A stretch of 64,000 nucleotides of DNA from Monocercomonoides exilis PA203 (GCA_001643675.2 LSRY02000027.1:186001-250000); one strand, 5' to 3'; positions 5,401-62,332 are shown, counted from the first letter of the stretch. The notes: a model not told the origin generated them from the sequence alone. Program-made: numbers and translations.

Positions 5401-8400
5401 TTGAGATAAAAATGATATCAGACTGGTGAATCACAATAAATTCCATCAGATTGACGGGCTCTGAATTATATTCAACTTCATCTATCCCATAAATAGCATT
5501 AAAGCTATTGTAATGAGTTTCTCTTAATTCAAAGCGAAATTGTGTCTCGTTAATCTGTGTCTTTATATTGAAGCATGCAACAAAGATATCACGACCAATT
5601 TTAGCAGCATTGGAGCTAAATGTCATATTTCTGAACAAAAAGTTTAGATCCCCAGTGAGAGACGAGGTGAGATATACACCTCCACCTCTTCCTTGAGAAG
5701 TGGAGCAACTGCATTGTTCAACGGAAGAATTCACCAAAACGAAACTACTTCCTCTTGTCAGTACGTTTTTAATAACTCCTCCTGAAAGCGAAGTACTTGA
5801 ACGGACGTCATTGAAAATAGTATTACTTATTTGTGTAACTGAAGGATTTGCTTTTTCAGCACTGAGTACGCAAGGTACACTGTCTTGACTATTAGCAGAA
5901 TTTATTACAGATGCATTTATCATCAAGGAAGAAGATACAGAATTTTTTAACAGATTTCTTCCATCTGGCAAGAAATACTCAATAATACTTCCATCAGTTA
6001 TGTTGATCATTGAAATTTGCAGCTTTTCAATATTCGCAACACAGTTTGAACGAGTAACAATAACGCTTTTTCCGAAATTGGCTTGCTCAATAAATAGTTC
6101 GTTAACAAATAGTTCACCTTCCTTAAGTGAAACAAACGAGTAATTAGCAGGCGAAGTGGATGTAGAATTTGTGCACAAAGAGCAGGCCAAAAATGTTAAT
6201 AAGCCTTCTTTGCTCTCAATAATTGTTCCTTTTTCATTAAAAAAATTGCTTTCAATTGAAAAAGTGATTTGATTAAATGTAAGCTTTCCAGTGTTTGATA
6301 AGAAAACATCAGAATCTTCGTTCCTCTCATTCTTTTGAATGAATATAATTGCCCTCAACTTTTCTGATAACTCAACTGCGGATGATTGAATCAAATAATC
6401 TGATAAAACATATGAGTCTTCCAAAGTTGTTGATACTGAAAGACTCATCTCCTTTTCTGCTGCAATCTGATTCATTCTCTGATATCCTGTCCAAAACGAG
6501 TTGCATGGGTCATTGCGGCTCCCGCATCTCAGCACATCAAATCCTAATGAAGAAACGTAAATCAACGAAGAAGTATATGATATTAGAAAGCGTAAGAGAT
6601 CTGTTTCGTTAAAAGTTCCGTCTTTCCCCGCAAAAAGTGCTGAATCATTGCCATAAGACTCAAAAGGAAAAAGAAATGATTGGTTTGTGACGGTTTTGTT
6701 CAAAGAAAATGATGAGACAAATAAACATTTTCCAACCTTAGCATTGTTTGAATCTTGAACAATACTGTCCAACACAAAAGGAAGCAATAGTGATGACTGA
6801 GTGCAATCCAAATATAAAAAGCCTCCTTTTCCGTTTGATAAAGATGCTTCGCATTTATTTGCAGTTGTATTCTTGATTAATAATGAAGATGAATCTGACA
6901 GAGAAACTTTCAATGCTCCTCCTTCTTCAATAGGTGTTTTCACACTCGAAAAAGAACAGTTTTCAATGTTTGCCTGGCAAGATGCCTGAAAAGGTGTATG
7001 AGTAAACGACATCAAAGAAATAGTTGTTTTGTTGAGAATGAGAGAACTGCCACTTGCAGAAAGAAGCGAATATTTCACTTGCTCCATTGAATTTTCCTGG
7101 AAAATACAATTCTGAAATGAAATTGAAGCTTCTTGACCTGATGTTGAAACAAGTGAGTTACGATCAGTATTGAACTTTGATGGAAGGATAAAAGCGATTG
7201 AATCAAAAATCAAAAATTCAGAAGTCATAATAATGGATTTCCCAGAGTTGTCTGATATTTCTTGAGAAATAGTTAAATTTGCTCTTTGTGGAAACGAAAT
7301 TGACTGAATTGTGAAAGAAGAAAGATCATAACAATCTTTTAATTGTACTTCCGCATTAATCCAAAGAATGATATTCTCATCTTTCTGAATATTTTGATAG
7401 CCTCTCCAGAAAGAAGCGCAAGGGTAAGTTCTGCTTCCGCATCCAACCATATCGAATCCAATTGAAGACACAAACACTTCTGAGCTGAGATATTGAACAA
7501 GAAATAGCAAAAGATTATGATATCCTTCTTTAAAATATGATGCATCCTGCCCCATCAAATCTAAATTTTCGCCTTCAACCTCATTTGTGAAATTTAAAAG
7601 AAATCGTTTGGTGTCAATAGAAGCATTCAGGTCTGTTCCAAAAAAGAAAATGTCTCTTCCAACAGAAGCAATGTTTGATTTCATTTTCAACTCCGAGAAA
7701 AGATATGTTGTGCTTATCTCTGTAACAAGATTGAGAAAAATTCCTCCTCCCTTTCCATTTGTGAGGCCTGCTTTACACTCTTCAATTGTCGAATTACTGA
7801 TTTCAAATGCTCCATTCATATCAATTTCGATATGAAAGGCTCCCCCATCCATTCGAAGTGAAGTGAAATTTTCAAAAGTGCAATTATCATTAATATTCGC
7901 AGAAGTTGATCCCAAAAAAGTTAGAGATGATAAGTCTGAATTGACGTTACGGAAAGTCGAATTTTGCATTGAAACTGTTCCACTTTCAGCTCGAATAATC
8001 CCCTTTTCGCTTCCAAAAGAAAAACCTTCAAGCAAAACCTTGTCTAATTGAAAAGATCCTCCATTGATTTGTGCAATCCACAAGTTGATTGGATCATTCA
8101 AATTATCGTCTCCCATAAATGTGCAGTTTGTAATTGAGCATTGACCAGAAAAGATTGAAAATAGCTCTTCGTGTGCCACTGAATCATCTATTGTGAATGC
8201 CAATTGACGGATGTTGTAAAACAGTTTGTCATTTCCATTCAGCACAAAATGAGCATCTCTTTCGATGGCTACATTCAGTTGGGTTGTCCCTTTCCCTTGA
8301 ATGTTCAAGGATATGCTGCGGGCTATCTCAACATCAAGAAATGTGTTATCTGTTATCCTAAGAATATTTTGCGAATCCTTCATGATTTTGAATCCATGTC

Positions 8401-11400
8401 CAATATCTTTGCAAGGCAAAGGTTCAGTTCCACAGCCTTGTCCATTTGTATAATTCCCGTTAACAAAGACAATATTTTCTCCTTCAGGAAACAAAAATGC
8501 AAGAATAGAAATATTAATTGCAGGTGTTGACGAATTATCATAAACCCAAAATCGATCTTCATCAAAATCTTCTTCGATTGATCCTTCCCAAAAAGATGGG
8601 TTTAGCATGACGCTTGGCTCCTGGCATTGTAAGTATATGTCTTTTCCTATATTTGCCTTATTATTAACAAAAGTATCTGCTTTTATTCCATATTTCGCAT
8701 TAACACTTGACAAAGTGAGATGGATGCCTCCTCCTTGACCATCTGGCGTTTCTTCAACTGAACTTTCATTGATTGTGCTCTTGATAAATGAAAATGTTCC
8801 TCCACTTTCTGTTATCACTTTGACACTTCCTCCTTTCCCATTATCGTCCAAACAAGAGATAAGTGTAAATGAGCAGTTTTTGGCTTCAAACACCTTTTCA
8901 TCTCCAATATTCCCATTTACAACACAACCATTGCCATTTTCTCTTGTTAGCTGAGAATATGTGTTGTTATTCATTGTCACTGATGCTTTCTCATCAATTG
9001 TAAGCATTGGACTATTTGCATATTTCGAATCGGACACAGTAGAATTTTCAAAGCTAATACCACTTTCATTAGACACAGAAATCAACCCACGCAAATGCGA
9101 GCTTGTCACATTCACCCATTTGATATCTTTCATTGTCCCTTTAGTCAATCTGCCAGAGAATACAAAGATTGAAGCAGTCGCAAATGCAATGTCATTTGAG
9201 GTAAAATTCTTTATTTCAACGTTTCCATTGGAAGTCATCAAGAAAGAATACGAAGGATTCACCAAAGAGGCAGTGATAACACAATTTGCAATTGTTAATG
9301 TGCTTTCTGAACATAAAAGAAAACTTTTTCTTGGAACATTAAAAGATTGAGGAAGTGAATAAACGATTCCGTCAAATGTGACTTGAACTTTTGTTTCAAT
9401 CAAAGCGTCTCCTTCACCAATCCCTCCTTCAAGAACTTCAATTGGCTCAGAAGAAAGAGATGCTATCGAAATAGGTTTGGCTGAAAGCAAGAGATGATCT
9501 AAAAATGAAAAAGATTGTAAAAGCTGTATAGATGCGTTTGATGAAGGAAAACGTGCTTCTGCAGCAAATGGGATTGTCAAACAGGGAAAATCTTTGAAAC
9601 CACATTGAGAATAATCCATTCCTCCATTGCCAACAACACAAGGTGAATAAAACGTTCTGAGGAACAGCACAAGTGGAACAGGAGATGACCTATAATTCTC
9701 TTCGGTTCCCATAAACTCATCAAGGTCAGGCTGATCATCAACGTTTATTTTCATCTGAAATGCAAATTTTGAAGAATGAACAAGTTTTTGAAGAGAGCCA
9801 CATTCAAGAAAGATATTCTTCCCACCATTTATGGCCACGTTAGCTGCTTCGCCAGATCCAAAAGAGAGCGTTCTGAGAACAAAATTAGCTGCTTGTTCTG
9901 CGCATATCAACATTAATGCCCCACCATATCCTCCTTTTGAGTTATCTTCTTTCGCAGCACATTTCTCAAATGACGTAATAGAATCATTGTTTCCTATTTT
10001 CAGTTGTGCGTTTCCTGAAAGAGAAACATATGCACCTCCGCCACAACCTTTCATTGCTTGGCAGCTGTCAAACGTATTATTGGGCATAAAAATTGACTGG
10101 CCTGAGTCAAGCAGTGCATTAACTGCACCTCCATTTCCTTCTCTTCTCCAAAGTCCATCGAATGTGCATTCAGAAATATTCAATGAATGCCCATTCAGAT
10201 CACAAATAGCAGGGCAATTTGTTGCTGAATTATCAATGAAAGATGAGCCCTGGATGGAAAATGTGCCTGTTGAAGTGTAGTATATAATTCCTTTATCATC
10301 AGGCCCCTTAACTGAAGAAAAAATGCAAGAATCAACAGAAGATGAAGCTTCATTAATGAGCTCAATGAAAGGAAAAGAAGAGAATGTCAATCCATCGATA
10401 TTTAAACCAGTGAGGCAAAATAGTCCTCCAGTTACAACAGCAAAAGCATATTGTATTTGGTTTGGAGCTGAAGTTGCAACTGTGCATTCATCAATAGTTA
10501 AAGTGCCTGATGATGAAAAAAAGAGGCTATTGCATCGTTGGAATGAATTTGGAAGAGCAAACATAAGTAATTTGAAGGTGGATGTAACACTGTTTTTAAT
10601 CAGCCCTTCCAAATTATCAACTGGATTCGACGATACAGTAAATTTTGATTGAACATCATTTGCTAAAAACGAATAGCTTCCAGTTGAAAGTGACAATTCC
10701 CCAAAAAGTTCAGCTTTCAGAACAATAACGCAGTTCAAACCTTGTGCAGCATTCCACCGATCGAATGCATAGTCAATTGTAACGCATGGCGCATCATTAT
10801 AACCACATCTCTCAAAATCAAATTTGTTTAATCCTCCAACAGTGATGGGAGATGGGTTTTGTCGAAGATATGTCACTAACGGAATGCAATAAGTTTCGTT
10901 ATTATTTTCGTATCCATTAAGTTCAGTGATCACATCCGTGTTAGGAGAAAATCCAAATGTTTCTTTGTTCACAATTTTTGAGAAATTGGTTGCCCGAAGA
11001 AATAAATTCGTTCCTGTTCGATTAGCAGAGCAATCAATAAATTGAATTGAATTCAGTTTTAAATTTTCAAACGATTTTACAAGATTTAAATATATTCCTC
11101 CTCCAAAACCTCCAATGGCAGATGTCATTTGAGCCTTACATGCATTAAATATGACATTCTTTGTTTCTCCAATACGCAGAATGCTTCCAGCTTCCATCGA
11201 AAGAGCAATTCCTCCTCCATTTCCTTGAGAGCAAATCCCTCCAATTTCATTATCATCAATTTTTATTATTTGTTGTGATCCAGCTGTGCCAGATATTACA
11301 GCTCCGTTTCCGGAACTCAAAACAATTCCTGAAAATGTGTTGTTACTAATCTCACTCTCAAGTGCTCTGTCTATCTCTATCAAAGATCGAGTTCCATTCA

Positions 11401-14400
11401 TCTCGGATATAAATGAAGTATTTGTAACGGTTAAATAAGAATTGGATTCAAGAAGTATCAAGCTTGAATAACCACTTGGAATAATATTTAATGCTTGAGT
11501 AGAATAAACACTCAGATGGGATGTACTTCCTATGCAATGAACAAATGGAGCGTTTGAAAATGAAAGAGATTCAGCTGTAACACGTAATACTATTAAGCTT
11601 CCTTTTTCAACTTTTGCAAAAGAAAAAGGAACAGAAGTAACATCAACATCTCCTTTTATTGTGCATTCTTTGATTGTGCATTTTGCGGAATCTTCTTGCA
11701 GATAGAATGCAGTTGTCTGAGTTGAGAATAGCCGCGCTTGTAAAAGAAATGTAATTGAGCTGAAATCAGTCACGCAATTAATTGTCATCACTCCAACAGA
11801 AGCAATATCACAACCAATCCAATGAACAGCAGATTCTTGGTCCTTTCCAACAAAAGAAATATCACTTAATTCAGAGAGAGAAAGTGTTTCGTTCATATGA
11901 TAATCAGAATCAAACGAAATAGATTTGTACTGGGCTTGCTGAGAAAGCGAGTATAAAATGGTTTGACATTTGAACGCTGCAAATCCACACGCAACTATAT
12001 CGTTCCCATCTTCTCCGACACTAATTTTATCTTCTCTGCTTTTTAAGATGTACAGAAGAGGAATTGCGGTTGATGGAGTTGCACCATCAATTCCCATTGC
12101 CTCCTCTTCCGTAAATGTAGAAGAAAAATAAGTAATAGTTTCGTTTGTAATGCTTTTCAAAAGTGAAGGAGATGAGACAAACAAATCTCTTCCATATAGA
12201 GCATTATTATTGGTAAATGATGGATTTATAATTGAAAAATCAACAATTGCCTCTCTCAAATTCAAATATATTCCTCCTCCATTCCCAGACTGTGCTGTGC
12301 ATTGACTCAATTCCGTAAAAGCGCTCAATCCTCCAAAAGAAAAATGACATCCTGAACCAAGAGTTAATGCAATTCCTCCTCCATTGCCGTTTGTGCTTGA
12401 ACAGTTCTCAATACTCACATTAGCTATTTCGAATCGTTCACCAGAAATAAGTTCATACGAAAATATTGGACCATCTCCTTTCTCTCGGACAATATTTTTA
12501 ATATATGCTCCATTAAAAACTAATTGAGTGCTCTTAGAAAGTGTAAATAATGAGCATTCGTCGAATGTGATTGAATGAATATTACAATCCTCCAGGAGCG
12601 CTTTTCCATCTTCCAACTGAAAAAAAGGTGTATAAAAAGCATCATTTGATGTTGAAGCAGTCACATTGCAATGAAAAAGATGAAGACTGCCATATGATTC
12701 ATTTATGGTGATTAATGAAGCACTTTTTGAAAGGATTTGATCGTGACATATTGTTATGTCTTCCACTGAAAGTGATCCATATCCAATTGAAACAAATGAT
12801 TTAGATGAAGTATTTGATTTTATTGTGACTGTTTGGATGTTGTCAGCTTTTCGGATGTTCACAGCACGCCCGATAATATCAATTTTGTTCTCGATGATGT
12901 TCTCTGAACAAATGAGAATTGCTTCATGGCGATGACTAACCCACTGAGAAAGGCTAAATTGGATTGATTTGCATTCATCCCCTATATTTCCACAATTAAA
13001 ATGATCTCCATCGGTTTTTGAATGATTGACGTAAATAGGATCGTTCACAGTTGGCACGTCCGGAAGCCATTCGCTTCTGTCTGTTGAACCCAAAGCGACT
13101 CTTTTATTGCTCTGTGAAGATGAAAATGAACAAATGAACCAATCAATGGATGCAATCAATTCAGAACCTTCTTTAAAAATAATGTCTGTTCCATTGTCTT
13201 CAGATGCAATGTTATTATCAAAGAAACAAAAATGAATCAAGCATCGTGCTTTCCCGCTTGGACGTGTCCATGTTATTGCTCCTCCTGTTTTGTATGCAAA
13301 ATTGTTTTCGAATAAGCAATCAAAAAACCTATCTTCACCTCTCATATCAGCAATATGAAAAGCTCCAGAATAACATGTTTCTGCTCTATTACTTTTAAAT
13401 ATGCTATTAACAAATGTGGACCCTTGATGCATCTCTAAATTTAGTGCTCCTCCAGCATAACCACAAATACAAGAATCAAAACAACATTGATCGAATTCGC
13501 CAGTTCCAAAAAATAAAGTTAATCCGGCTCCAAAAACATCATTAAGGATATTTGTTTTGATTAACTTGCAACATGAAAAATTGTCTCTTTTCAGATAACA
13601 ATTCTGAGTTGACTCCGAATAAATTGCACCACCTCTGCTCGAATATTTATCGGAAGTTCCGGTGCAATTCGTAAAAGTGCTATCTTTAACTAACAAAGAA
13701 GCTGTTCCAGTTATACGAATTGCTCCTCCACTCCTATCTGTTGAAGTTATATTTTCAAATCTGCATGACTGAAAAGATACAGAACCTTCTGAAAATGATC
13801 CCAATGGAACTGAATAATTTTGTTTTACATAAATCGTTTTTGATCTTAAAAATGAAGAATTAAATGAGTGAAAACCATTTCCCATTTCTGCACAGATAAC
13901 GGTTCCATCAAAAGGATTGGCGCAATCAGATAGTTCACAATTAATTAAGCAGCTTTCTTGTTTATATGACTTTGAGCGAACAAGTGCTTCGTGAAAGTTT
14001 CGAGCGCTTTGAGTTGTATTCAAGAAAAAACAATCAATTACAGTTGTTGAAATGTATTCGCTCGCAATTAGTGGAGAACAAGAGTTGATAACTATATGTT
14101 CAAATGCTGAATGTGAAATTCTAACTGTATTTATATTTGATGGAAGTTGATCCATTTCAACGAGTGTTGGACAAATACTTGTGATTTTAGGTAATATTAA
14201 AGTCAGATTTGAAAAGCATACATGTCCTGATGATAGCAAAACTGGATTTTTAAAAACTTTGAAAGATATTTGAAAACAGCAACATCGAACAGATGTTTCT
14301 GATGCATGATTGAGCATTGCAATATTTTTTCCTTCTTCTTGAAAAAAGTTGCAGAAAGAAAAAGAAACTGAAGAATTTCTCTCAGAAAATAAAGAAGAAA

Positions 14401-14638
14401 TAAAAGCATTCATAAATGAAATGTTGTCGTTGTTTGGTAATCCTTTCAATAAATTTCCGCTATGTGCTTTCTTTCGTTCAATAAAAGAAATTTTGTAAGG
14501 ATTTTCAAAAAAATTAATGTGCTGAACAGCTTCCCCTTCACTATCCTTGGAAACTTGCTCATAAATTTCACAAGTGTTGAAAATAACAAAAAAGAACGTG
14601 TAACGAAACATTATCAAGAAAAAATTCAAGAAAAACAT
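2435..14638 (-). CDS. Giant type-I membrane protein: repeated Pmp-like beta-helix ectodomain (GGAI / FxxN / FxxC), single TM helix, cytoplasmic degenerate TK/TKL-like pseudokinase
   Basis: Uninterrupted 4067-aa ORF with a hydrophobic N-terminus and 8 CGxxxxxC-capped modules carrying GGAI/GGGI motifs. TM IVTLILFAVLFLLVFIICIALAV followed by RWRK. Kinase C-lobe motifs LRWKAPE..SVAFSIGMMLWECLT..PF..GERP are present; GxGxxG, HRD and DFG are not seen. Confidence 0.85.
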   Translation of the reverse strand: MFFLNFFLIMFRYTFFFVIFNTCEIYEQVSKDSEGEAVQHINFFENPYKISFIERKKAHSGNLLKGLPNNDNISFMNAFISSLFSERNSSVSFSFCNFFQEEGKNIAMLNHASETSVRCCCFQISFKVFKNPVLLSSGHVCFSNLTLILPKITSICPTLVEMDQLPSNINTVRISHSAFEHIVINSCSPLIASEYISTTVIDCFFLNTTQSARNFHEALVRSKSYKQESCLINCELSDCANPFDGTVICAEMGNGFHSFNSSFLRSKTIYVKQNYSVPLGSFSEGSVSFQSCRFENITSTDRSGGAIRITGTASLLVKDSTFTNCTGTSDKYSSRGGAIYSESTQNCYLKRDNFSCCKLIKTNILNDVFGAGLTLFFGTGEFDQCCFDSCICGYAGGALNLEMHQGSTFVNSIFKSNRAETCYSGAFHIADMRGEDRFFDCLFENNFAYKTGGAITWTRPSGKARCLIHFCFFDNNIASEDNGTDIIFKEGSELIASIDWFICSFSSSQSNKRVALGSTDRSEWLPDVPTVNDPIYVNHSKTDGDHFNCGNIGDECKSIQFSLSQWVSHRHEAILICSENIIENKIDIIGRAVNIRKADNIQTVTIKSNTSSKSFVSIGYGSLSVEDITICHDQILSKSASLITINESYGSLHLFHCNVTASTSNDAFYTPFFQLEDGKALLEDCNIHSITFDECSLFTLSKSTQLVFNGAYIKNIVREKGDGPIFSYELISGERFEIANVSIENCSSTNGNGGGIALTLGSGCHFSFGGLSAFTELSQCTAQSGNGGGIYLNLREAIVDFSIINPSFTNNNALYGRDLFVSSPSLLKSITNETITYFSSTFTEEEAMGIDGATPSTAIPLLYILKSREDKISVGEDGNDIVACGFAAFKCQTILYSLSQQAQYKSISFDSDYHMNETLSLSELSDISFVGKDQESAVHWIGCDIASVGVMTINCVTDFSSITFLLQARLFSTQTTAFYLQEDSAKCTIKECTIKGDVDVTSVPFSFAKVEKGSLIVLRVTAESLSFSNAPFVHCIGSTSHLSVYSTQALNIIPSGYSSLILLESNSYLTVTNTSFISEMNGTRSLIEIDRALESEISNNTFSGIVLSSGNGAVISGTAGSQQIIKIDDNEIGGICSQGNGGGIALSMEAGSILRIGETKNVIFNACKAQMTSAIGGFGGGIYLNLVKSFENLKLNSIQFIDCSANRTGTNLFLRATNFSKIVNKETFGFSPNTDVITELNGYENNNETYCIPLVTYLRQNPSPITVGGLNKFDFERCGYNDAPCVTIDYAFDRWNAAQGLNCVIVLKAELFGELSLSTGSYSFLANDVQSKFTVSSNPVDNLEGLIKNSVTSTFKLLMFALPNSFQRCNSLFFSSSGTLTIDECTVATSAPNQIQYAFAVVTGGLFCLTGLNIDGLTFSSFPFIELINEASSSVDSCIFSSVKGPDDKGIIYYTSTGTFSIQGSSFIDNSATNCPAICDLNGHSLNISECTFDGLWRREGNGGAVNALLDSGQSIFMPNNTFDSCQAMKGCGGGAYVSLSGNAQLKIGNNDSITSFEKCAAKEDNSKGGYGGALMLICAEQAANFVLRTLSFGSGEAANVAINGGKNIFLECGSLQKLVHSSKFAFQMKINVDDQPDLDEFMGTEENYRSSPVPLVLFLRTFYSPCVVGNGGMDYSQCGFKDFPCLTIPFAAEARFPSSNASIQLLQSFSFLDHLLLSAKPISIASLSSEPIEVLEGGIGEGDALIETKVQVTFDGIVYSLPQSFNVPRKSFLLCSESTLTIANCVITASLVNPSYSFLMTSNGNVEIKNFTSNDIAFATASIFVFSGRLTKGTMKDIKWVNVTSSHLRGLISVSNESGISFENSTVSDSKYANSPMLTIDEKASVTMNNNTYSQLTRENGNGCVVNGNIGDEKVFEAKNCSFTLISCLDDNGKGGSVKVITESGGTFSFIKSTINESSVEETPDGQGGGIHLTLSSVNAKYGIKADTFVNNKANIGKDIYLQCQEPSVMLNPSFWEGSIEEDFDEDRFWVYDNSSTPAINISILAFLFPEGENIVFVNGNYTNGQGCGTEPLPCKDIGHGFKIMKDSQNILRITDNTFLDVEIARSISLNIQGKGTTQLNVAIERDAHFVLNGNDKLFYNIRQLAFTIDDSVAHEELFSIFSGQCSITNCTFMGDDNLNDPINLWIAQINGGSFQLDKVLLEGFSFGSEKGIIRAESGTVSMQNSTFRNVNSDLSSLTFLGSTSANINDNCTFENFTSLRMDGGAFHIEIDMNGAFEISNSTIEECKAGLTNGKGGGIFLNLVTEISTTYLFSELKMKSNIASVGRDIFFFGTDLNASIDTKRFLLNFTNEVEGENLDLMGQDASYFKEGYHNLLLFLVQYLSSEVFVSSIGFDMVGCGSRTYPCASFWRGYQNIQKDENIILWINAEVQLKDCYDLSSFTIQSISFPQRANLTISQEISDNSGKSIIMTSEFLIFDSIAFILPSKFNTDRNSLVSTSGQEASISFQNCIFQENSMEQVKYSLLSASGSSLILNKTTISLMSFTHTPFQASCQANIENCSFSSVKTPIEEGGALKVSLSDSSSLLIKNTTANKCEASLSNGKGGFLYLDCTQSSLLLPFVLDSIVQDSNNAKVGKCLFVSSFSLNKTVTNQSFLFPFESYGNDSALFAGKDGTFNETDLLRFLISYTSSLIYVSSLGFDVLRCGSRNDPCNSFWTGYQRMNQIAAEKEMSLSVSTTLEDSYVLSDYLIQSSAVELSEKLRAIIFIQKNERNEDSDVFLSNTGKLTFNQITFSIESNFFNEKGTIIESKEGLLTFLACSLCTNSTSTSPANYSFVSLKEGELFVNELFIEQANFGKSVIVTRSNCVANIEKLQISMINITDGSIIEYFLPDGRNLLKNSVSSSLMINASVINSANSQDSVPCVLSAEKANPSVTQISNTIFNDVRSSTSLSGGVIKNVLTRGSSFVLVNSSVEQCSCSTSQGRGGGVYLTSSLTGDLNFLFRNMTFSSNAAKIGRDIFVACFNIKTQINETQFRFELRETHYNSFNAIYGIDEVEYNSEPVNLMEFIVIHQSDIIFISTDSTTANEDNKKCGTQSLPCRTVQYASTHLTFDYKSQLVVINEVAINTEFDLGDLTFTSRSYTSAIVQVESSISASRSSVIICHETVELVLLAFAFEADSDSAHETLLTIDSGVLSISRCSFSASDPASLSELPFGIVFSRRSSVSISDCQISELLFLENPAIMGFHSSIKISQVNLTSLSSQPSVFNLADSCRLEIEKLFASDVTLKSSSIYNFDLSESKTNESGSPFHNFSAALCSFLNVSCNSSHSSILSSQPNALELKLLNCTFEKCCSTLDKGYTIALSSCKNGSIESCLFDGVELDVSTGKKGNGYMNDICHWNGSIIDLDKSSISIKDSMFMNSFKGGLSITGGSLSVEKSEFSNNKILIDGYPSPRRNVICDEGAELNVVSLKGGDGQEKNSSLWFLNEGCTLKGIASERSSVFFIPAIRSIQTEDVEDDLRLLITGILLLPCNISLRICSAIGDAFLYETYYFSEEGYISENEVNISIPLKVISSASEETEVSASILYGQSSSPSETNKWILKNRTFANSEGANVSKGNINNTDWKIVTLILFAVLFLLVFIICIALAVRWRKAKERTEELEEIVNDTVRKDPKAFEMVTMEMSPEEQWRRAEREAEKKNEERIKKRVYEKTMEHSESSEHLLSECGSTEYILGRDSDKIPEWALEKVEEEETRKRTPSPSISSTSTTSTTDSDSSFICGEDLCPTTSSMSNLVDAMACSSPHEKLIVDLRDSLFMLLHGRNAKKEMAIGTLKEREMTAAQILFWVANLALHSFDEMENELSSLANLSPHIVLFSEHMVICIALHSDCSSDSDSSSVSSLTIVSSSSNISVLSERFTDSPPPSSAFEDEDSFKKECLRWKAPELQVNKKMGATKESVAFSIGMMLWECLTLDVPFGEYEAEVAGQKIVNGERPNLEHVKKSNYLEFIRISLSENQTDRPTLFGMKREFITHFPANAVILTITDAICDENSSDGKKKTNSHEKKKEENQK

Positions 14639-24939: not shown

Positions 24940-26105
24940 AAATGGGGGAAAATATGAACATTCAAGCATTTTTTTCACAAGGCATTGAAAAATAGCTTCA
25001 CTCATAACTTTATTTCGCTTTCTCAGATTTCAAAATAAATTTGATTTTCATATCCGTAAACAGGCATCGTTGGAATCAAAACATAAAGTTTTCCAACATT
25101 ACACGAATGTCAAAAAATGTACTCATTTTTATTGTGTTTTTTGATATGAAAAAGTTAATGAAAAGTGCATAATTTTTCAATGAAAATGTCTGAAGCAAAA
25201 TATTTAACCCTATATGGGGGAAAATATGAGACTTCAAGCTTTTTCATTGAAAATTTTTGCACATCAGATGAGCTTTTTTAGATTAAAAAACACTACAAAA
25301 ATTTGTTTATTTTTTGAAAAGCATGTGAGGTCACAAAACTTTTTAGTGTTTCATCGATGATGTTTGTTCACAGAAATGAAAATCTAATTTATTTTGAAAT
25401 CTGTTAAAGTTTAATAATTTTATGAGCGAAGCAATTATTTAGTGCTTTGTGCAAAAAAGGCTTGAAAGTCCGTATTTTTCCCCATATCGGTTCTCAAAAT
25501 TCTTAAATAAATACGTGCACAACTTTAAAATCGAGAAAGCTGATAAAAGAATGATGAATTGAGAAGTTACAGAAGAAGAGAATGTTTAAGGAAGATTGCT
25601 TCGATTACTGGAATTTTCCTTTTGAGACCATCAATTGCAAAATGAACAACATTCTGAGTTTATTGGTAATATTGTTCAGATGTTTCGAACAGTGATTAGT
25701 TTTCTCACAGAAATAGGGTTAAATGCAATGACTTGTGAAGGAATACCTGATACGATCTGTTGAAGACAAATTCTTGTCAGGAAGACGGCAAGTGGAGTAT
25801 ATCCTGGTACCAAGGTTATCCCACCCACTATTTATATCATTTTCATTTCTGAAATTTCTTCAAGGGTTAACCCAAACCCTCATTTTGCTCGGCAAAACCC
25901 TTGACCATCACACTATCCAATATGAAATTGTTTAACTCGTCAAAACCCTAAAACCTAAAAAGCACGATAAGAATATTTTACAGAATATCAATAATTAAGG
26001 GAGTTGATCATGTGGTACCAGTATCTTCTCCATTTGCCTATGAGCGAAGCAATTTTTCAATACTTTGTGCAAGAAAAGCTTGAAAGTCCGTATTTTCCCC
26101 CAATT
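24940..26105. mobile_element. Cluster of degenerate MITE-like ends: two left ends (~24941-25008, ~25208-25250) and two right ends (~25421-25492, ~26039-26105)
   Basis: A ~65-bp motif atgggggaaaatatg..ttcaagc..cacaag.cattgaaaaatagcttcactcata and its reverse complement tatgagcgaagcaatt..tgtgcaa..gcttgaaagtccgtattttcccc occur in inverted orientation. One left end reads TTAA-CCCTATATGGGGG. Confidence 0.65.
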
Positions 26106-27490
26106 GAGAAAATATGGAGCGAAATATTTTGCTCAATAATTTTTGTTCCATTCTTCTCTTTCAAATATTTTTCTCTAATTTTAAAATTCTTCTGTAATTA
26201 TTTGCATAGTTTCGGTTGATTTATAATGAAGCGATTGTAGAAAAAGTTTTGAACAATTCCCAGTTTTTTTCAAAATTGGAAAAATTTTGCCCCATATTCC
26301 AAAAAAAATAGATATAATTTTTTGATTATAAAATTCAATATATTTCATTCCACCCAACATTCACAAAATAGTCTGCTATGTTCAACGATAAATCAGATAA
26401 AAACATTTCATTGAAAAAATAAAATGTTTTATGGAAACTTGTGATGATATCTTCGTATCCTTCTTCTTCCATTTTGTCAAACATCATTTTTGAAATCGCT
26501 TCATATGCTTCCTTGTGTATTTTTCCACTAAATCTTTTTGAAATTCCCAAACAGAACCCCAAGCAATCCCATGCAAGTTTATCTGAAAATGAAAACAGAT
26601 GAAGTTCACTCACAAACAAATCAATTGCTCCGCCTTTCAGCAAATACACAACACATGCACTTTCATTTTGCACTATTGCTTGAAAAAGATCAATGCACTG
26701 TCTAAATATTACTCTTTCATTCTTTTTTGTTGCTTCACACAGACTAGCAAGGCAACAAATCAGTCCAACACTTTCATCAGTCCACATTTTGCACACCCAA
26801 AAATAAGAATCTAATACATTGATCCATCTCATTAATGTCACGAATTCGTTTGTATCTTTTTCTCCTTTTTCTTCTCTCTTCTTCCATTCTATGCATTTTA
26901 TCAAAGCTTCTAATTCTTTGGTTGCTTCTCTTGAAAAATGAAGTTTATTTACAATCACACTTGTCAAACTTTCGTCTTTGAAGAGTTGTGTGATCAAAAA
27001 CTTCCAAGCTGATTGATATGCAATACGTGTCATGTTTCTATGCTCTTGATGATATTCGATGATTTCTATAATCTTTTTCAAATACAGATCTTTTTTGATT
27101 TTCTCAACAAAAAATGCAAAATTCAATGATGAGTATGCTAATATTTATGTTAAACCTTTGAAGAGTATATGCAACTCAAAGCCAATAAAGCCATTTCCAC
27201 TTCTTTCCGATCTCCCTCGTTTTTTTCTTTCCTTAATGCAACCTTCAGAAGGCAAGGAACACAGATTGAAAGCAATTCTGGAGAATAATAGCGGTTTAGA
27301 AAAAGATAACATCCACAAAGATCAACAAGAAGCTTTTCATCCTTTTCAAATTTCTTCTTCTTTTCTTCAATTATCATCTTTTCAAACCTTGTACAAAGCA
27401 AAGTATTTTTAAAACATGAGTCGAACATACAATTCAATGAGTTGAAACATCCCATATGCTTCAGCAATAAATTAGCATTTTCCAAAGATA

Positions 27491-27899
27491 CCATGGGTGC
27501 TTAACCCGCACCCTGGTGCCAAACCCGCCCCCTGCAAATTTCTTGAAAATAGAGATATTTATTTTTGCTTGTCACAGTTGTTCATTGATAGTGAATTTGA
27601 TTGAAACTTATTCAAAAAAATTATATATTTTATTTTTTTATAAAAAGACTTTCAGAAAAATGGATTTATAATATTTTAATTTGGAAAAGAACTTTATCTA
27701 TATTTACTGAAAAAGAAAAAAAGAAGAGTTCAAAAAATATGCACACGCTTGTTTGTTAATGTGTTTTCAAATATCTTTATTAGTTTTTTGGATTTGAATT
27801 ATTCAGCAACAAATTTCGCTTTTTAATTTATTGATCAATTCCATTAAAATGTGAAAAACGAATCGAAAGTTCAGTAGCTGCATTGATAGAGGTTTGTGA
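27491..27899 (+). repeat. Left terminal inverted repeat (409 bp)
   Basis: Starts CCATGGGTGCTTAACCCGCACCCTGGTGCCAAACCCGCCCCCTGC; identical to the right TIR. Confidence 0.97.
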
Positions 27900-29284
27900 A
27901 AATTGTTTCAAATGATTTACTATTACAGCTTTGTATTATTTATGTTATTACTTATTATTTTGTTTTATAACTCATCTGTTTTTTAATTTGAATTATTTAA
28001 TAAATTTATTCTCTTATTAATTTGTTTTGAATATTTAATATTTGATAAATTGTTTCCATGGTTTAGATGTTATAACTTATTTATTGTTGATGTTGGTCAA
28101 GTTCCAATATTTTTCTTTTGTGAGTTTTGGTGATACGAATTTTTTTTGACGATTATTTTTGGTTATTTTATTGTTTTCAAAATTGTTATTTACGTTCTGC
28201 GTATAAATGTTGTTGCACATATGAATGTTTTATTCACTTGTCACAAAGATGTCAGATTTGCAAATTATGAGCTTTTTGTTTTTAATGATATTTTCTTTAC
28301 AAAACTGTTGTTTTCAGAATGGCTATTTTTTAACAATGATTGTGATGGAATACATTTAATCTTTGATTTTGTATTCATTTTATAATCAAGTTATATTTAA
28401 CCTGAACTGTCGTATTCAAGAGATTAATCTCACTGACAAAAATTAAAATACTTTTTTCAATAAGGATGATAACTGAAAAAAAATATAATTAGAAGAAAAA
28501 TAAATTAGTCATTCATCGATATAACTATAAAAATGTGAAAAAATTTCCAAAATGTTATAAAAATAGTTCAATTTGAAAATTAGCTCACAATTTTCATGAA
28601 AATACGTTTATCCTTGGAAACAAATATTTTTTGCAAATCATTATTAAAGAATAATAATTATGAAATTGTTTCAAGAAATTTGAATGATATGATTAGACTG
28701 TCTTCGCTTATCAAAAGCAATTTTTTACAAAAAAAGGAATTGAAAAGTGCTCTTAAATACAAGTGAAATGAGAAGAAAGGCATGTGAACTGACAGATGAA
28801 AATATGTTTTATAAAGAAAATTACAATTTTCAAATAAAAAATCTGCATTTGGTTCAACGCAGTCACATTCGTTTGCATGATCACATATTTTTAAGGAAAT
28901 TTATAAATTTGGAAAAAACATGGAATTTGAAATAATTCACATGATAAATACTTTCAACAAGTTAATGATAATATGAAATTTTGATGATAATATTGAAAGT
29001 TGCAGAATGTTTCCTGATCAGTGAAAAACAACAATTCGAAATTTGATTTCAAAAACATAAAAATAATTAAATGAATTTAAAATAAAAGTGTTTGAAAATT
29101 ATGAAAATAATTATCTTCATTTAAAAAAAGTTATTAAAAAAGACAAAATACATTTCTATCGCCAATCAAATATAAATGTACCACAAATCAATCAAAGTTA
29201 TCGTATACATCGATTATAACATTAAATAATCAACATTTTATATAATAAAAGCAAGTTTTCATTGAAAAACACTTGAAACAATTC

Positions 29285-29693
29285 TCACAAACCTCTATCA
29301 ATGCAGCTACTGAACTTTCGATTCGTTTTTCACATTTTAATGGAATTGATCAATAAATTAAAAAGCGAAATTTGTTGCTGAATAATTCAAATCCAAAAAA
29401 CTAATAAAGATATTTGAAAACACATTAACAAACAAGCGTGTGCATATTTTTTGAACTCTTCTTTTTTTCTTTTTCAGTAAATATAGATAAAGTTCTTTTC
29501 CAAATTAAAATATTATAAATCCATTTTTCTGAAAGTCTTTTTATAAAAAAATAAAATATATAATTTTTTTGAATAAGTTTCAATCAAATTCACTATCAAT
29601 GAACAACTGTGACAAGCAAAAATAAATATCTCTATTTTCAAGAAATTTGCAGGGGGCGGGTTTGGCACCAGGGTGCGGGTTAAGCACCCATGG
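29285..29693 (-). repeat. Right terminal inverted repeat (409 bp)
   Basis: Ends ...GGGTGCGGGTTAAGCACCCATGG followed by TA. Confidence 0.97.
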
Positions 29694-30899
29694 TAATTTC
29701 TTTTCTTCAATCATTTCGTAGATTTTGTTGAAATTCTTTGTTGTGAATATAGAATAAAGTTCTTCATTGTCCATCTCATCCATAGCTTTGTTCGTTTCTT
29801 CGATTTTCTGTTTCTGCACTTCGTAATCACAATTTCCAAGTTCATTAAACAGTTCTTCGAAAACAATGAAAATAGAAAAATAAAAATCATCAGAAATTCA
29901 AATGCAACAACAATTGCAAACCAGAAAACTTATTTTCGAATTTCATGTTCTTCTATTTTTTGTGAAATATTATGTTCAGAAAACATTGAATGTTTACCAT
30001 TTTCATAAAAAATTTACAACAAAGATAGCATAATTTGGAAATGAAATTTTAAAACAGAATTTCAATATTAGTACTCATACAATTATTTTAGATGTTGATA
30101 TTTTGTTTTGATTTGTAACTTCAAACAAAACCAACTGTTTTTAAAATTCTTTTTTGCAATGGAATATTTGATCTTGATTTTGAAAAATCCAAAATAAACT
30201 ATTCACATACTGAGATAACGATAAAAAAAATTGTACGACACGGCAATTCTGGTATCAGTTTTACGAGAGCAATATGGAACAATTATTCAAAGATCGTGAA
30301 ACAATATATTGTTCAAATTATCAATCTTTTCTTTGCAGATAAACAGCGAGGAAGAGAGCTGGACGTTGAGATTCATACATGAGAGAGAATAATAAACAAA
30401 AATTGATATTTAACTCGTGTTTCATTGGAATAAGTGGTAAATGCATATTTATTAAAGAGTCGATTGGACCAATATGAGAAAGTCAGAAAAGAGCACATAA
30501 ATGAAGGGAAAGAATATAAATGGATCTTTATTAGAACTTATTAGAAAGAAGATCGATAATCAAGCGTTATTAGTGATATTCAAGAAATTGACAGGATGGA
30601 AAGGATGTAATATTTGCTAAAATTGGATAAAGAAGAGGAAAATGAAGGGCGTTTGAAGTCAAAAAATTCGAAAAAAATGTTTCTTATAAAACAATCAGTT
30701 ATACTTGCATTTTTGAAAACAAGAAACTCTCTCATTGCTCTTTTATAGGGAACGTAGATTGTAGTTTTTATATTTTTTATTTTATTTTATTTTTTGAAAA
30801 CTAAATTATCAACAAATGAAATGCAGATGATTTGGCTTTTCCAATTATGAGGACTTATAAGTGGTAGAACTTGCATTTGTTAAAATTTATCTATTCCAA

Positions 30900-36839: not shown

Positions 36840-39610
<2,771 letters not shown>

Positions 39611-39840: not shown

Positions 39841-44754
<4,914 letters not shown>

Positions 44755-49528: not shown

Positions 49529-52500
49529 GTCGTCATTTAAAGAATTCTACAGAGTACTCGAGTCAGATCTTTCTTGCGGCTTTTATCGTTGTTCAAATTT
49601 GCATCAAAAAAAAATTCTTCAGCCAATGTTTCACTGCAGAACATGCAGTAAAAAAAAACAACCAATTTGTGCGGTATATTATAAATTAATTTACTAAGAA
49701 ATAATTTTTGAAAAAATCTTTCCTTTAAAGTTGTGTGCAGTTATTTGCCATGAATATCATGAAATAGCTTTTGCTGGAATTGAAGATTCTGAAGCAGTTT
49801 GATTTTCTCTCACCGGAGAATGATTTTTTTATATTTAAATTTTTTTCCTCAAATTTTCTTGACAAAAAGTGTTGTTGTTCGAATTGTCTTGGACATTGCT
49901 TTATTTCAAACGAAGGAGATGGCTTGAAAGCACCTTTCGCCGAACGAGACAGACAAATAAGCTTAACAACAAATTGCATTTACGTTGAGCCAATGTTTGA
50001 TTTTATTTGTTTTCGAAATTTAATGAATATCTTTTCAAATATCATTGATCAGTATTTTGATTGGTTTCTTAGAAGCTAATTCGACTTTCAAGCAGCTTCC
50101 AAGGCCATTAAGAGAAAAAACACTTTCAACTTCCACATATTCAATGCATTCGCTTTCGTTCAATCCGTTTTCAAGCAAGTTTTTATCAAAAGTTTTGCTT
50201 CACACTTCTTCACAAACTCCTAACGTCGTTCCAAAACGAAAGCATTGTGCCATGTCTGATGCATCATCCTTCCTTAGCCATCCTCTTTACACTTCTTTTT
50301 TCAAGCGCTTTTCATCCTTTCCTCTTCCATCAAGCTGTACTCTCCAACTGTCTCCTCATCCAATCCACCAGCCGTCCTTCTCATGTGCCACATGCCGAAT
50401 ACAAGGTGGCTTGTGCTTGTCGTGCGTCGCAAACTGCCATTTTGGGCACAAAACAAGTCTTCAGCTGGCACATGCCTGCTTTGCGTGTGTGTGCGGAGAC
50501 GAATACGGAGAGGGTTCCAAGTGCAGCTGCGGGGCGAGCGTGAACGTTGCGTCTCTTGACGAGGCACGTGTCATCAAGCCTATCAGTTTGCAATCGCTGT
50601 TTGCTTCTTCTGATGATGAAGGTGGGCATTCATCAAAGCTACTTCATCCTCCAGCATCATCATCATCATCATCATCATCTTCTTCTTCTCCTTCTCCTTC
50701 TTCATTTCTCTCCATATATTCATCAAAATACTATCACGATGCTCACAAATCGAAAACACTGACGTCAATTCAAGGAATGCAGAACACGTTTAATTCTCCG
50801 TTTATTCCTCATCCGTCTTCTGTTTGGATGGAAATAGCACTCGGCGGTTGGAAAGCTGAGCAAACAAGAGAAAGATTGAAAAGAGAAAAGGAGCTTATTA
50901 ATGATAGCAAAGGTGGTATTGAAACCAGACAGAAAAATGAAATGTTTGATGACGGAAGAGGTGGTATGGAAAATAAAGAAGAAGAAGAAGAAGAAGACGA
51001 TTCCAGAGAGCAGATAGATGAAGAAGGAAGAGACTTGTGTGAAGGCCGAACGATTGTGTTCAAAGAAATAGAGCGTCGAATGAAGCCCTATCTGAACCAA
51101 GTTCTCGGCTATCCCCAGCTCTACAGCTTGATTGCTGGAGAAAGCACACAGCAGAAGCAGATAGAAGCCTATGAACGCGACCCGTCTGTATATGAGCCGA
51201 GCTTTCTGCAGCTCATTCAGCTTGTGGGGATGTACGACCTCTCCCGAAAAGATGGTTTGGGAGTGCGTTTGAAAGAGGAGGCAGACGAGTCATACAGAAG
51301 ACACCAGGGCGAAGGACATCACCCGCCGCCTCTGTCGAATGCGATGGCAACTCCTTTTCTGTCTTCCACTATTCATCCAGTTGGACTGTATGTGTTGTTC
51401 CACACACACCGCACATCATTCGTGGGGACGCATTCGATTTCGTCGGCTTTTCCTCGTCTTCCTTCACACAGGCATTTGATGAGCAACTGCTGGTGGGATG
51501 TGGGAGAGTCCAATATCGGCAAGCACGCTCGACTTAAAGAAGAGCAGAAGCGGAAAAGGAGAATTCGAAAGTTAATTCTGGAAACACAAAAGAACTTGCC
51601 AAAGAAAATAAAGCAATTGAGTGCAGATCCTTCTGCAAGTGATGAATCATCTTCCACAGCAATCGAATCAATGCGAGAAAAAGAAGATGACACAACATGC
51701 CATTCATTTGCATTCAAAGAGTATTTCTATCCAACACCGCCAACCGATCCTGCCCAGCCTTCTTTCACTTCCCTTCTTCCTCTGCCTCTGCCTCCAAGCT
51801 GCTGCCCTTCCACTCCAAAGCCCCGCCAGGCCTTTCTCTGCGCCTCTTGTACAGGAAACCTCCTCAGCGGACTTATTTGCAGAGAATGTGCCTCAACGTG
51901 CCATTTCAGCCATTCAGTCATTTGCATCGGCTTTGTTGCCTTTGAGTGTGCGTGCTGCACCCGCAAAGGAGGAAACGCTGAAAACTGGTTCAAAAGAATC
52001 AGCAGAGAATTGCATTTGGAAAATTCATCGAAGAATGGCATGCAACCAGAACAGAAAGGAAGCCATCAGAGCGGAATTCGATCATATTCAGAGGAAGACA
52101 GACACAGAAATCAAAAGAAGGATTCGAGAAGAGCAAAAAGGAAAGATAACAGCAACGACTCTGAAGAAGATGATGACAATTCTTCTTCCTCTGAAGAAGA
52201 GAGGCAGCGAATGAAGGAGGAAGAGGAAGAGAAGATGAAGAAGAAGTCAGGTGGCAATTGGTGTTGCTTGCTGCAGAACGGAGCAGCAAATGAACTGTGG
52301 ATGCTGTTTGAGGAGCGAAGGCGTTGTGTGATTGAGTGGATGAAGGACGAAGCGGAGTGGACACGGCAGATGCACAAGCTGAGGATGATCGAAGACTCAA
52401 AGGAAGACAAGGAAGAGGGATCATTCACACAACAGACAAGACAGAGCCGGCAATTCAGCAGAACGACTTATCCTGTCCCTTATCCACCAGTCAGCCTGCA

Positions 52501-61500: not shown

Positions 61501-62332
61501 CTCACTTCTGCCAGATGTAAATGCTCTCAATTTCCAAGGAGCATCTGCACTGGCTGTTGCTTGCTCTTTCCATAGACCCCAAATTGTGGCACTCCTTTTG
61601 GATCATCCGTCGATTGATGTGAATGCTGGAGGCGTTGAGGAGCTTGCATTTGGTACTGTTACTAAGTCATCATCAATTTCTTCTTCTTCTGATAGGACAG
61701 ATGAGACCACTCACAGATTGGGCATATGCACTCCATTGACTGTCATTTGCAGTGAAGGTGCTTGTTGCTGTGCTGAGTTAAACAAAGTTAGAACAATGAG
61801 GGCTCAATCTTTGGCAGCAAGCAGAAGTCAGACTGGTGCAAGTTCTGCAAGCACTTCATCTGTAGACTATAGCTCAGGATATGGTATTTCAGTCACACAA
61901 AGCAGTCCAAGTTCGAAGGCTGCAGGCACCACAATGTGCGAGTGCGAAGAAAGAAGGCTGAACGTGCTGGACATCCTTCTCAGCCATCCGCGTGGGAAAG
62001 TTCTGGACTTCAACAAAGGACTTCCACTTCTAATTGGGCTGAAAAGGCGTCACCCGAAAGAAGTCGAGAAAATACTCAGGTTCTGCCTCGAAAACAATTT
62101 GAATGTTGATGTCAATGCATCTGATGGAAGCGAGCACTTGTTGTACGTTGCGACTAAACAGGGGTACTCTTCGATTGTTTCACTACTCCTTTCTTTCCGT
62201 AACATTGACATTGGTAAGAAAACAAGCCCAAAAGCATATACTGCACTGCAAGCTGCGATATCGATGAACAACAATGAGATAGCTTCTCTTTTGCGTGGAA
62301 AAGAATCTTCATTTGCTCCCTCTGAGAAATAA
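49529..62332 (+). CDS. Giant (>4,100 aa) protein with three UBR-box-like zinc fingers and dispersed ankyrin repeats
   Basis: 4095-aa ORF 50045-62332 plus upstream exons (~49529-49673, 49731-49796, 49870-49994) that splice in phase. CxxC..CxxCxxxCHxxH..CxC occurs three times; about 9 ankyrin-like TPLxxA..G..VxxLL units. True start unresolved. Confidence 0.8.

What the first reader, a model, noticed from the sequence alone, without database searches (positions are those of the whole stretch)
27489..29695. 2.2-kb TA-inserting element with perfect 409-bp terminal inverted repeats, inserted into an exon
Seen: TA-[CCATGGGTGC...GCACCCATGG]-TA; the two 409-bp arms match with no mismatch or indel; the ~1.39-kb core is AT-rich with no intact ORF. 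The pre-insertion site reconstructs exactly on the minus strand (aaa tTA tct ttg = K L S L), and the rest of the host gene still reads open. Known: TA duplication plus long TIRs is typical of IS630/Tc1/mariner elements (C. elegans Tc3 and Tc6, Euplotes Tec), but these termini are not the usual CAGT start. Inference: a recently mobilised non-autonomous member of a possibly undescribed long-TIR family, moved by an autonomous partner elsewhere in the genome.
Basis: partly seen in the sequence, partly recalled or inferred. Interest (0 to 1): 0.85.

Follow-up and report, generated by a model that had tools for sequence, protein, structure and literature searches.

The report
Non-autonomous long-armed pogo transposon
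This is a real 2.2-kb jumping element with no transposase of its own, one of about 20 copies in the protist Monocercomonoides exilis; it most likely borrows the enzyme of a pogo-type transposon with the same tips, and its two long arms match because they copy each other, which is not by itself a sign of youth.

Summary
Observation confirmed: TA, perfect 409-bp arms, a 1,385-bp non-coding core, TA, inside an exon that is otherwise open; two paralogs show one TA at the empty site. The genome is Monocercomonoides exilis. About 20 copies form three subfamilies (2,189-2,205 bp when uninterrupted, arms 409-500 bp); 75 of 79 ends are TA-flanked. The predicted autonomous partner exists: ~2.56-kb elements with the same terminal 42 bp but only ~44-bp TIRs, encoding a pogo-superfamily (Pfam DDE_1, DD35D, Fot-like) transposase; 8 have stop-free frames of 505 aa or more. 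So the mover is pogo, not Tc3/Tc6/Tec. Perfect arms are not a clock: in all 16 copies tested the two arms are sisters, 80 of 85 copy-private variants sit in both arms, yet cores differ by 6-30% from the nearest copy. Arm-to-arm gene conversion is the best explanation. The intact host frame separately suggests a fairly recent insertion. The closest precedent is Galileo 2-TIR elements. Earlier scan notes report homogenised arms and pogo-tipped fold-backs elsewhere in this genome (unchecked). No reads, Repbase or Dfam check was possible. Verdict: an undescribed family of a known kind.

The parts
27489..27490 (.). left TA target-site duplication
   Evidence: single TA at the empty site by paralog comparison
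27491..27899 (+). left arm (409-bp TIR)
   Evidence: 0 mismatches to the right arm
27491..27533 (+). terminal segment shared with the pogo element; holds two 19-bp direct repeats (arm positions 6-24 and 25-43, 16/19 identical), the likely transposase-binding sites (inferred)
   Evidence: 42/42 identical to one end of the transposase element L048 and 41/42 to its other end
27900..29284 (.). 1,385-bp AT-rich non-coding core, homologous and colinear across the three subfamilies
   Evidence: no transposase remnant (tblastn; HMM --max, best E 2.2), no codon periodicity, no Rfam hit inside the core
29285..29693 (-). right arm (409-bp TIR)
29694..29695 (.). right TA target-site duplication
29922..29946 (-). 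host gene exon 1 (MKFENKFS; modelled start)
   Evidence: intron at a matching place in paralog L004
29694..29854 (-). host gene exon 2, part before the insertion
27156..27488 (-). host gene exon 2, part after the insertion
   Evidence: 47-49% aa identity to paralogs
26335..27102 (-). host gene exon 3 to the stop codon; member of a very large M. exilis family with no Pfam domain

Best explanation
A non-autonomous cut-and-paste DNA transposon of Monocercomonoides exilis, moved in trans by a pogo-superfamily (Fot-like, DD35D) transposase. SHOWN: TA duplication; about 20 homologous copies at unrelated sites; no coding capacity; terminal 42 bp identical to those of ~2.56-kb elements that encode the transposase, 8 of them with stop-free frames. 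INFERRED: the transposase binds the two 19-bp repeats at each tip, cuts the element out and inserts it at a TA. This copy landed in exon 2 of one member of a huge gene family and probably inactivated it. SHOWN: the two arms of a copy evolve together (sisters in 16 of 16 copies; 80 of 85 private variants in both arms). INFERRED: this is arm-to-arm gene conversion by host homologous repair at the resident locus, working on any long, close inverted repeat. Tracts rarely reach the last bases next to the non-homologous flank. The ~44-bp TIRs of the autonomous partner are too short to be corrected. Occasional conversion from other copies makes arms mosaic. Identity and partner about 0.92 likely; in-place conversion about 0.75.
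For: Copies and sizes. TA: 75 of 79 ends, reversed-pattern control 0. Partner: L048 (DDE_1 E 1e-17); genome-wide transposase places fall inside the same termini (against 7 and 10); P0001, 610 aa, D187/D301/D337, spacing 35; fold matches Mos1, SETMAR and Sleeping Beauty. Concerted arms. Only 7 substitutions in 16 x 405 bp, against about 680 if arms had aged like the cores; 3 of the 5 events lie in the first 6 bp (P 3e-5). Short-TIR partners differ between their ends at 14 of about 357 bp (9 of 17 pairs), against 3 of 6,144 inside long arms. Interrupted copies have more diverged arms (11/1,453 against 7/6,480). L036 carries a subfamily-A tract in both arms.
Against: No transposition or binding assay. 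The arm beyond about 70 bp and the core show no similarity to the two partner copies in hand, so descent from the partner is not shown. Partner copies with differing ends may simply be older. The higher arm divergence of nested copies also fits greater age without in-place conversion.
Confidence: 0.72

Rival explanations
1. Same element and partner, but the arms are reset at the moment of transposition (one arm templated from the other during excision or gap repair), so arm divergence dates each insertion and most copies have hopped recently.
For: The host frame is still open, which is unlikely if the insertion were as old as the subfamily radiation (P 0.003 at 3.8% divergence, 0.065 at 1.9%). 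Nested, probably immobile copies have more diverged arms.
Against: Mutations after insertion should be spread evenly, but 3 of 5 events lie in the first 6 bp. Copies with altered tips (L002, L003) still have perfect interiors. No copy has a sibling closer than 6% in the core, so all 16 lineages would have had to hop without leaving a twin. Earlier scan notes report the same homogenisation in gene palindromes that do not transpose (not checked here).
Confidence: 0.15
2. The elements are real, but arm identity is inflated by assembly polishing (Nanopolish plus ten Pilon rounds) that mixed reads of the two arms.
For: Residual mismatches near unique flanks are also what mis-mapping would leave. 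No raw-read check was possible. One apparent copy (L045) is a contig-end fold-back that may be an artefact.
Against: With 2x300 reads (PMC8767320), every position of a 410-500-bp arm is within reach of unique flank or core, so anchored reads should win (my reasoning, not tested). The same assembly keeps interior arm differences in L007, L042, L035, C44 and C20.
Confidence: 0.08
3. The element is moved by another enzyme (a Tc1/mariner-like transposase or a Tec-like tyrosine recombinase), or by a long-TIR autonomous parent now lost, and the shared tips reflect old ancestry only.
For: Only the tips are shared with the pogo element; the origin of the core is unknown.
Against: 42/42 identity at the tip, the same TA target and the same tip variants in both classes. 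Of the 18 paired, not fold-back elements of 2.5-4.2 kb with these tips, 17 contain the pogo transposase match; one (C25) was not among the scored candidates.
Confidence: 0.05

Closest known systems
pogo superfamily, Fot/Fot-like family (Gao et al. 2020, PMC7386202); Aspergillus Tan1 (the NCBI name of P0001)
   Same: Partner transposase is Pfam DDE_1 with DD35D; TA TSD (50 Fot-like elements in that paper); 40-60-bp TIRs (their Type 2); length within 1.2-5.2 kb
   Different: Only 24-28% identical to the nearest non-oxymonad proteins. [quoted passage not shown] Long TIRs (their Type 4, 392-856 bp) were reported only from insect pogo elements; here they occur only on the non-autonomous partner.
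Galileo 2-TIR elements of Drosophila mojavensis (Marzo et al. 2013, PMC3573991)
   Same: Non-autonomous, 1.7-2.2 kb, long TIRs, 98-100% identity between the TIRs of one copy against 92-97% between copies, chimeric copies, conversion and NAHR proposed
   Different: Galileo is P superfamily with a 7-bp TSD; its 2-TIR copies are traceable deletion derivatives of very variable length. Here the TSD is TA, the core is unrelated to the partner and the length is nearly constant (2,189-2,205 bp).
MITEs derived from pogo elements (e.g. Arabidopsis Emigrant/Lemi1; from my own knowledge and ref. 37 of PMC7386202)
   Same: Non-autonomous elements that share only the tips and the TA target with a pogo element
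   Different: MITEs are usually under 600 bp and high-copy; this one is 2.2 kb with about 20 copies.
C. elegans Tc3/Tc6 and Euplotes Tec
   Same: TA duplication and long TIRs (Tec about 700 bp, PMC7325037; Tc3 and Tc6 from memory)
   Different: Tec encodes a DD34E transposase and a recombinase (PMC7325037); Tc3 is DD34E Tc1-type (memory). The partner here is DDE_1, DD35D.

Membership tests
IS630-Tc1-mariner (ITm) group, non-autonomous element | TA target-site duplication | tested here: met
   17 of 18 fetched copies have TA on both sides; 75 of 79 ends; one TA at the empty site in paralogs
IS630-Tc1-mariner (ITm) group, non-autonomous element | TIRs shared with a DDE/D transposase-coding element, no transposase of its own | tested here: met
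   42/42 terminal identity; no transposase remnant in any core
IS630-Tc1-mariner (ITm) group, non-autonomous element | actual mobilisation by that transposase | not testable with these tools
pogo superfamily (partner element) | DDE_1 catalytic domain with DDxD triad | tested here: met
   PF03184 E 7e-17, above the curated cut-off; D187, D301, D337; fold matches Mos1 and Sleeping Beauty
pogo superfamily (partner element) | N-terminal CENP-B/psq/Tc5-type HTH DNA-binding domain | tested here: inconclusive
   no Pfam HTH hit; weak colinear profile match to the HTH region of Tc5-HTH-positive homologs (prob 63%, E 7e-5); helical N-terminus in the model
Fot/Fot-like family | DD35D spacing | tested here: met
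   spacing 35; shared with Passer, so not diagnostic alone (PMC7386202)
Fot/Fot-like family | 40-60-bp TIR and TA, TAA or TAAA TSD | tested here: met
   L048: 44-bp TIR, TA/TA
Fot/Fot-like family | placement in the clade by phylogeny with reference transposases | not tested
   no named reference set in hand; nearest outside hits are 23-30% identical and mostly unnamed
MITE | under about 600 bp and high copy number | tested here: not met
   2.2 kb, about 20 copies
Tec / Tc3-like long-TIR autonomous elements | DD34E transposase (plus recombinase in Tec) inside long TIRs | tested here: not met
   long-TIR copies are non-coding; the partner is DD35D with short TIRs
Already catalogued repeat family (Repbase/Dfam) | match to a library consensus | not testable with these tools
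   no such library here; the genome paper gives class totals only (PMC8767320)

The most novel reading that the evidence does not exclude
The 2.2-kb length and the 400-500-bp arms are functional. The element would be an old, size-constrained parasite of the pogo system whose arms are rewritten from each other in every transposition cycle through a fold-back intermediate. That would be a TIR-resetting step, like LTR regeneration, not described for DDE cut-and-paste elements. It would explain why three subfamilies with cores diverged close to chance level keep the same length within 1%. Against it: cores change almost only by 1-bp indels (11 indel events against 234 variable sites), so constant length needs no selection, and residual mismatches cluster at the tips.
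Probability: 0.1. Interest if true: 0.65.

Novelty: new member of a known kind. Interest (0 to 1): 0.33.

Why it matters
It puts a name and a likely mover on one of the unclassified repeat families of the amitochondriate M. exilis (35% of that assembly is unclassified repeat, PMC8767320). It points to an oxymonad pogo lineage with several intact-looking transposases. Its general lesson is practical: in this genome TIR identity cannot date a DNA transposon insertion, and the long-arm versus short-TIR pair sharing the same tips is a natural control for measuring the length threshold and edge effect of inverted-repeat gene conversion. None of this is a new kind of system.

Tried and rejected
Core as a decayed transposase: tblastn and HMM --max negative. 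Core as a hidden gene: no codon periodicity, frameshifting 1-bp indels. RNA gene: nothing near an Rfam threshold. Element as a decayed full hairpin: the inner halves pair no better than shuffled controls. Long arm derived from one end of the partner: not significant beyond about 70 bp (z at most 2). A second intron in L048's transposase: rejected, it is a nested ~540-bp MITE. L045 as a copy with 948-bp arms: rejected, the repeat runs through the flanks. Empty site by paired flank searches: uninformative, lists cut at 40 of 560-970 candidates. Terminal motif in JGI metagenomes: 0 hits. PDB sequence search of P0001: none. Ploidy could not be confirmed from the papers searched.

Full report
OBSERVATION. 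The element is as described. From 27489 to 29695 the sequence equals its reverse complement for 411 bases including the flanking TAs, i.e. 409-bp arms with no mismatch, and the repeat does not extend outward. The core is 1,385 bp and 22% GC; no frame in the element is open for more than 83 aa. Removing the element and one TA gives IEEKKLSLENA on the minus strand. Paralogs in L047 and L004 have the same codons in register, so a single TA was duplicated. The host gene models as three exons (29946-29922, 29854-27156 interrupted, 27102-26335) with GT-AG introns and no other break. It belongs to a very large family: 560-970 candidates, best paralogs 73-82% identical, no Pfam domain.

ORGANISM. The assembly has 82,301,135 bases in 101 contigs. 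This matches the Monocercomonoides exilis assembly of PMC8767320, and the nearest proteins are named from that species. That paper gives repeat class totals only and names no such family in the passages read.

FAMILY. The element hits about 20 long-armed copies. Subfamily A has 9 (window, C43, C2, C20, C49, C9, C12, and interrupted copies on C8 and C91), B has 6 and C has 5. Uninterrupted copies are 2,189-2,205 bp with arms of 409-500 bp; the C44 copy is about 2,207 bp after removing a 12.4-kb insert. Cores are 90-94% identical within A (L007 about 70%), 78-93% within B, 87-91% within C, and near chance (about 50%) between subfamilies, but short colinear blocks (E down to 1e-19) show common descent. 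A 21-base tip pattern finds 79 ends, 75 preceded by TA, with a control of 0. Flanks are otherwise unrelated and often read ATA...TAT. The core has no transposase remnant, codon periodicity or RNA family.

THE MOVER. The same tips bound a second class of elements of about 2.56 kb, or longer when they carry nested inserts. The one held in full, L048 (C17:243047-246153), has a 44-bp TIR and TA on both sides, and encodes a DDE_1 transposase. Its ends match the window's first 42 bases at 42/42 and 41/42. A genome search places the 15 best transposase matches (77-100% identity) at sites with these tips. Eight have no stop in the match and open frames of 505-529 aa: C56, C10, C16, C24, C17:392k, C80 twice, C40. 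One database relative, P0002, has lost the third Asp, so not all are necessarily active. P0001 (610 aa, NCBI 'putative transposase Tan1') has D187, D301 and D337, i.e. DD35D. Its model matches Mos1, SETMAR and Sleeping Beauty transposases. By the criteria of Gao et al. 2020 (PMC7386202), DD35D, a 40-60-bp TIR and a TA target fit Fot-like pogo elements. The HTH domain is only weakly supported and no tree with references was built, so I file it as pogo superfamily, probably Fot-like. The genome holds many more pogo transposases at 43-63% identity, nearly all away from these tips. The shared tip holds two 19-bp direct repeats, the likely binding sites (inference from how ITm transposases bind sub-terminal repeats).

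THE ARMS ARE NOT A CLOCK. In a tree of 32 arms the left and right arm of a copy are identical or differ by 1-2 bases, and group together in all 16 copies. Of 85 sites private to one copy, 80 are in both arms. Arms differ at 7 bases in 16 x 405, whereas ageing at the rate of the cores would give about 680. Cut-and-paste does not regenerate TIRs (established knowledge), so one arm must be copied onto the other. Three observations favour conversion in place. First, 3 of the 5 residual events are in the first 6 bases (P 3e-5). Second, the short-TIR partners are not corrected: 9 of 17 pairs differ within 21 bases, 14 differences in about 357, against 4 of 20 long-armed pairs (P 0.04) and 3 in 6,144 inside long arms (my tally; tests). 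Third, interrupted or far-separated arms differ more (0.76% against 0.11%). L036 has a subfamily-A tract near arm positions 150-220 in both arms, i.e. conversion from another copy followed by arm-to-arm copying. Each point has a caveat: partners and nested copies may be older, and polishing could leave edge mismatches. I argue against an artefact from read length and from interior differences kept in five copies, but could not test it with reads.

AGE OF THIS INSERTION. Independently of the arms, I simulated decay of the 417 host codons with the family's own substitution spectrum. The chance of staying open is 0.55 at 0.4% divergence, 0.24 at 0.9%, 0.065 at 1.9% and 0.003 at 3.8%, the per-lineage depth of subfamily A. 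So this copy probably arrived after the subfamily radiated, provided the gene lost function on insertion. That is a loose bound, not proof of present activity.

COMPARISON AND NOVELTY. It works like a Galileo 2-TIR element: 1.7-2.2 kb, non-autonomous, 98-100% identity between a copy's own TIRs, chimeric copies, conversion proposed (PMC3573991). It is not a Galileo member (P superfamily, 7-bp TSD). It shares tips with its partner as pogo-derived MITEs do, but fails the MITE size and copy-number test. Long TIRs in pogo were reported only from insects; here they sit on the non-autonomous partner in an oxymonad. I found no description of the family, but Repbase and Dfam were out of reach. Earlier notes of this scan describe homogenised arms in other fold-backs and gene palindromes of this genome (unchecked). 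They fit a host-wide process, which lowers the case for an element-specific mechanism; I had reached the conversion reading before seeing them.

LIMITS. 

VERDICT. Real, well explained, an undescribed family of a known kind. Interest 0.33.

Noticed in passing
window 24942-25485: ~540-bp hairpin MITE-like element (arms about 74% identical, no spacer, G-run ends next to TA-rich sites). Relatives or halves occur in L005, L006, L035, L047, L048 and L049, including inside the transposase gene of L048. Its arms are not homogenised.
   Followed up: partly
L037 ~1650-1910, L044 ~1420-1670, L048 5' region: ~250-bp palindromic MITE with GGGT(G/C)ATTC-type ends nested in two long-armed copies and in the transposase element
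   Followed up: partly
L045 (C77:3100-6600): Fold-back with arms of at least 1.6 kb (99.8%) near a contig end, carrying the family tip on both arms; real palindrome or nanopore fold-back artefact
   Followed up: partly
L031 1732 to L032 4231 (C44): 12.4-kb insert with short imperfect inverted ends in the middle of a subfamily-C copy; it holds a 981-aa ORF (L031 4173-7118, -) with no Pfam hit
   Followed up: partly
L035 2971-5376 (C8): 2.4-kb TA-flanked element with 188-bp TIRs (98.9%) carrying host-gene-like ORFs (242 and 247 aa), inserted in the right arm of a subfamily-A copy; looks like a Pack-type element
   Followed up: no
L046 1093-3717 (C2:1827592-1830216): 900-bp-armed inverted repeat (98.9%) bounded by poly-T runs that holds inner parts of the family arm without its tips
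   Followed up: no
G000 C28:1044993-1047191: 2,199-bp element with the family tips on both ends that did not appear in the DNA search; perhaps a fourth subfamily; not fetched
   Followed up: no
G000: At least 100 further pogo-type transposase matches at 43-63% identity, several stop-free: a large oxymonad pogo radiation
   Followed up: no
window 2435-14638 (-) and 50045-62332 (+): Two single-frame ORFs of about 4,070-4,100 aa; not examined
   Followed up: no
window ~42900-43390: Long (TTTA)n microsatellite; also poly-T runs near 38050-38130 and 39415-39455
   Followed up: no
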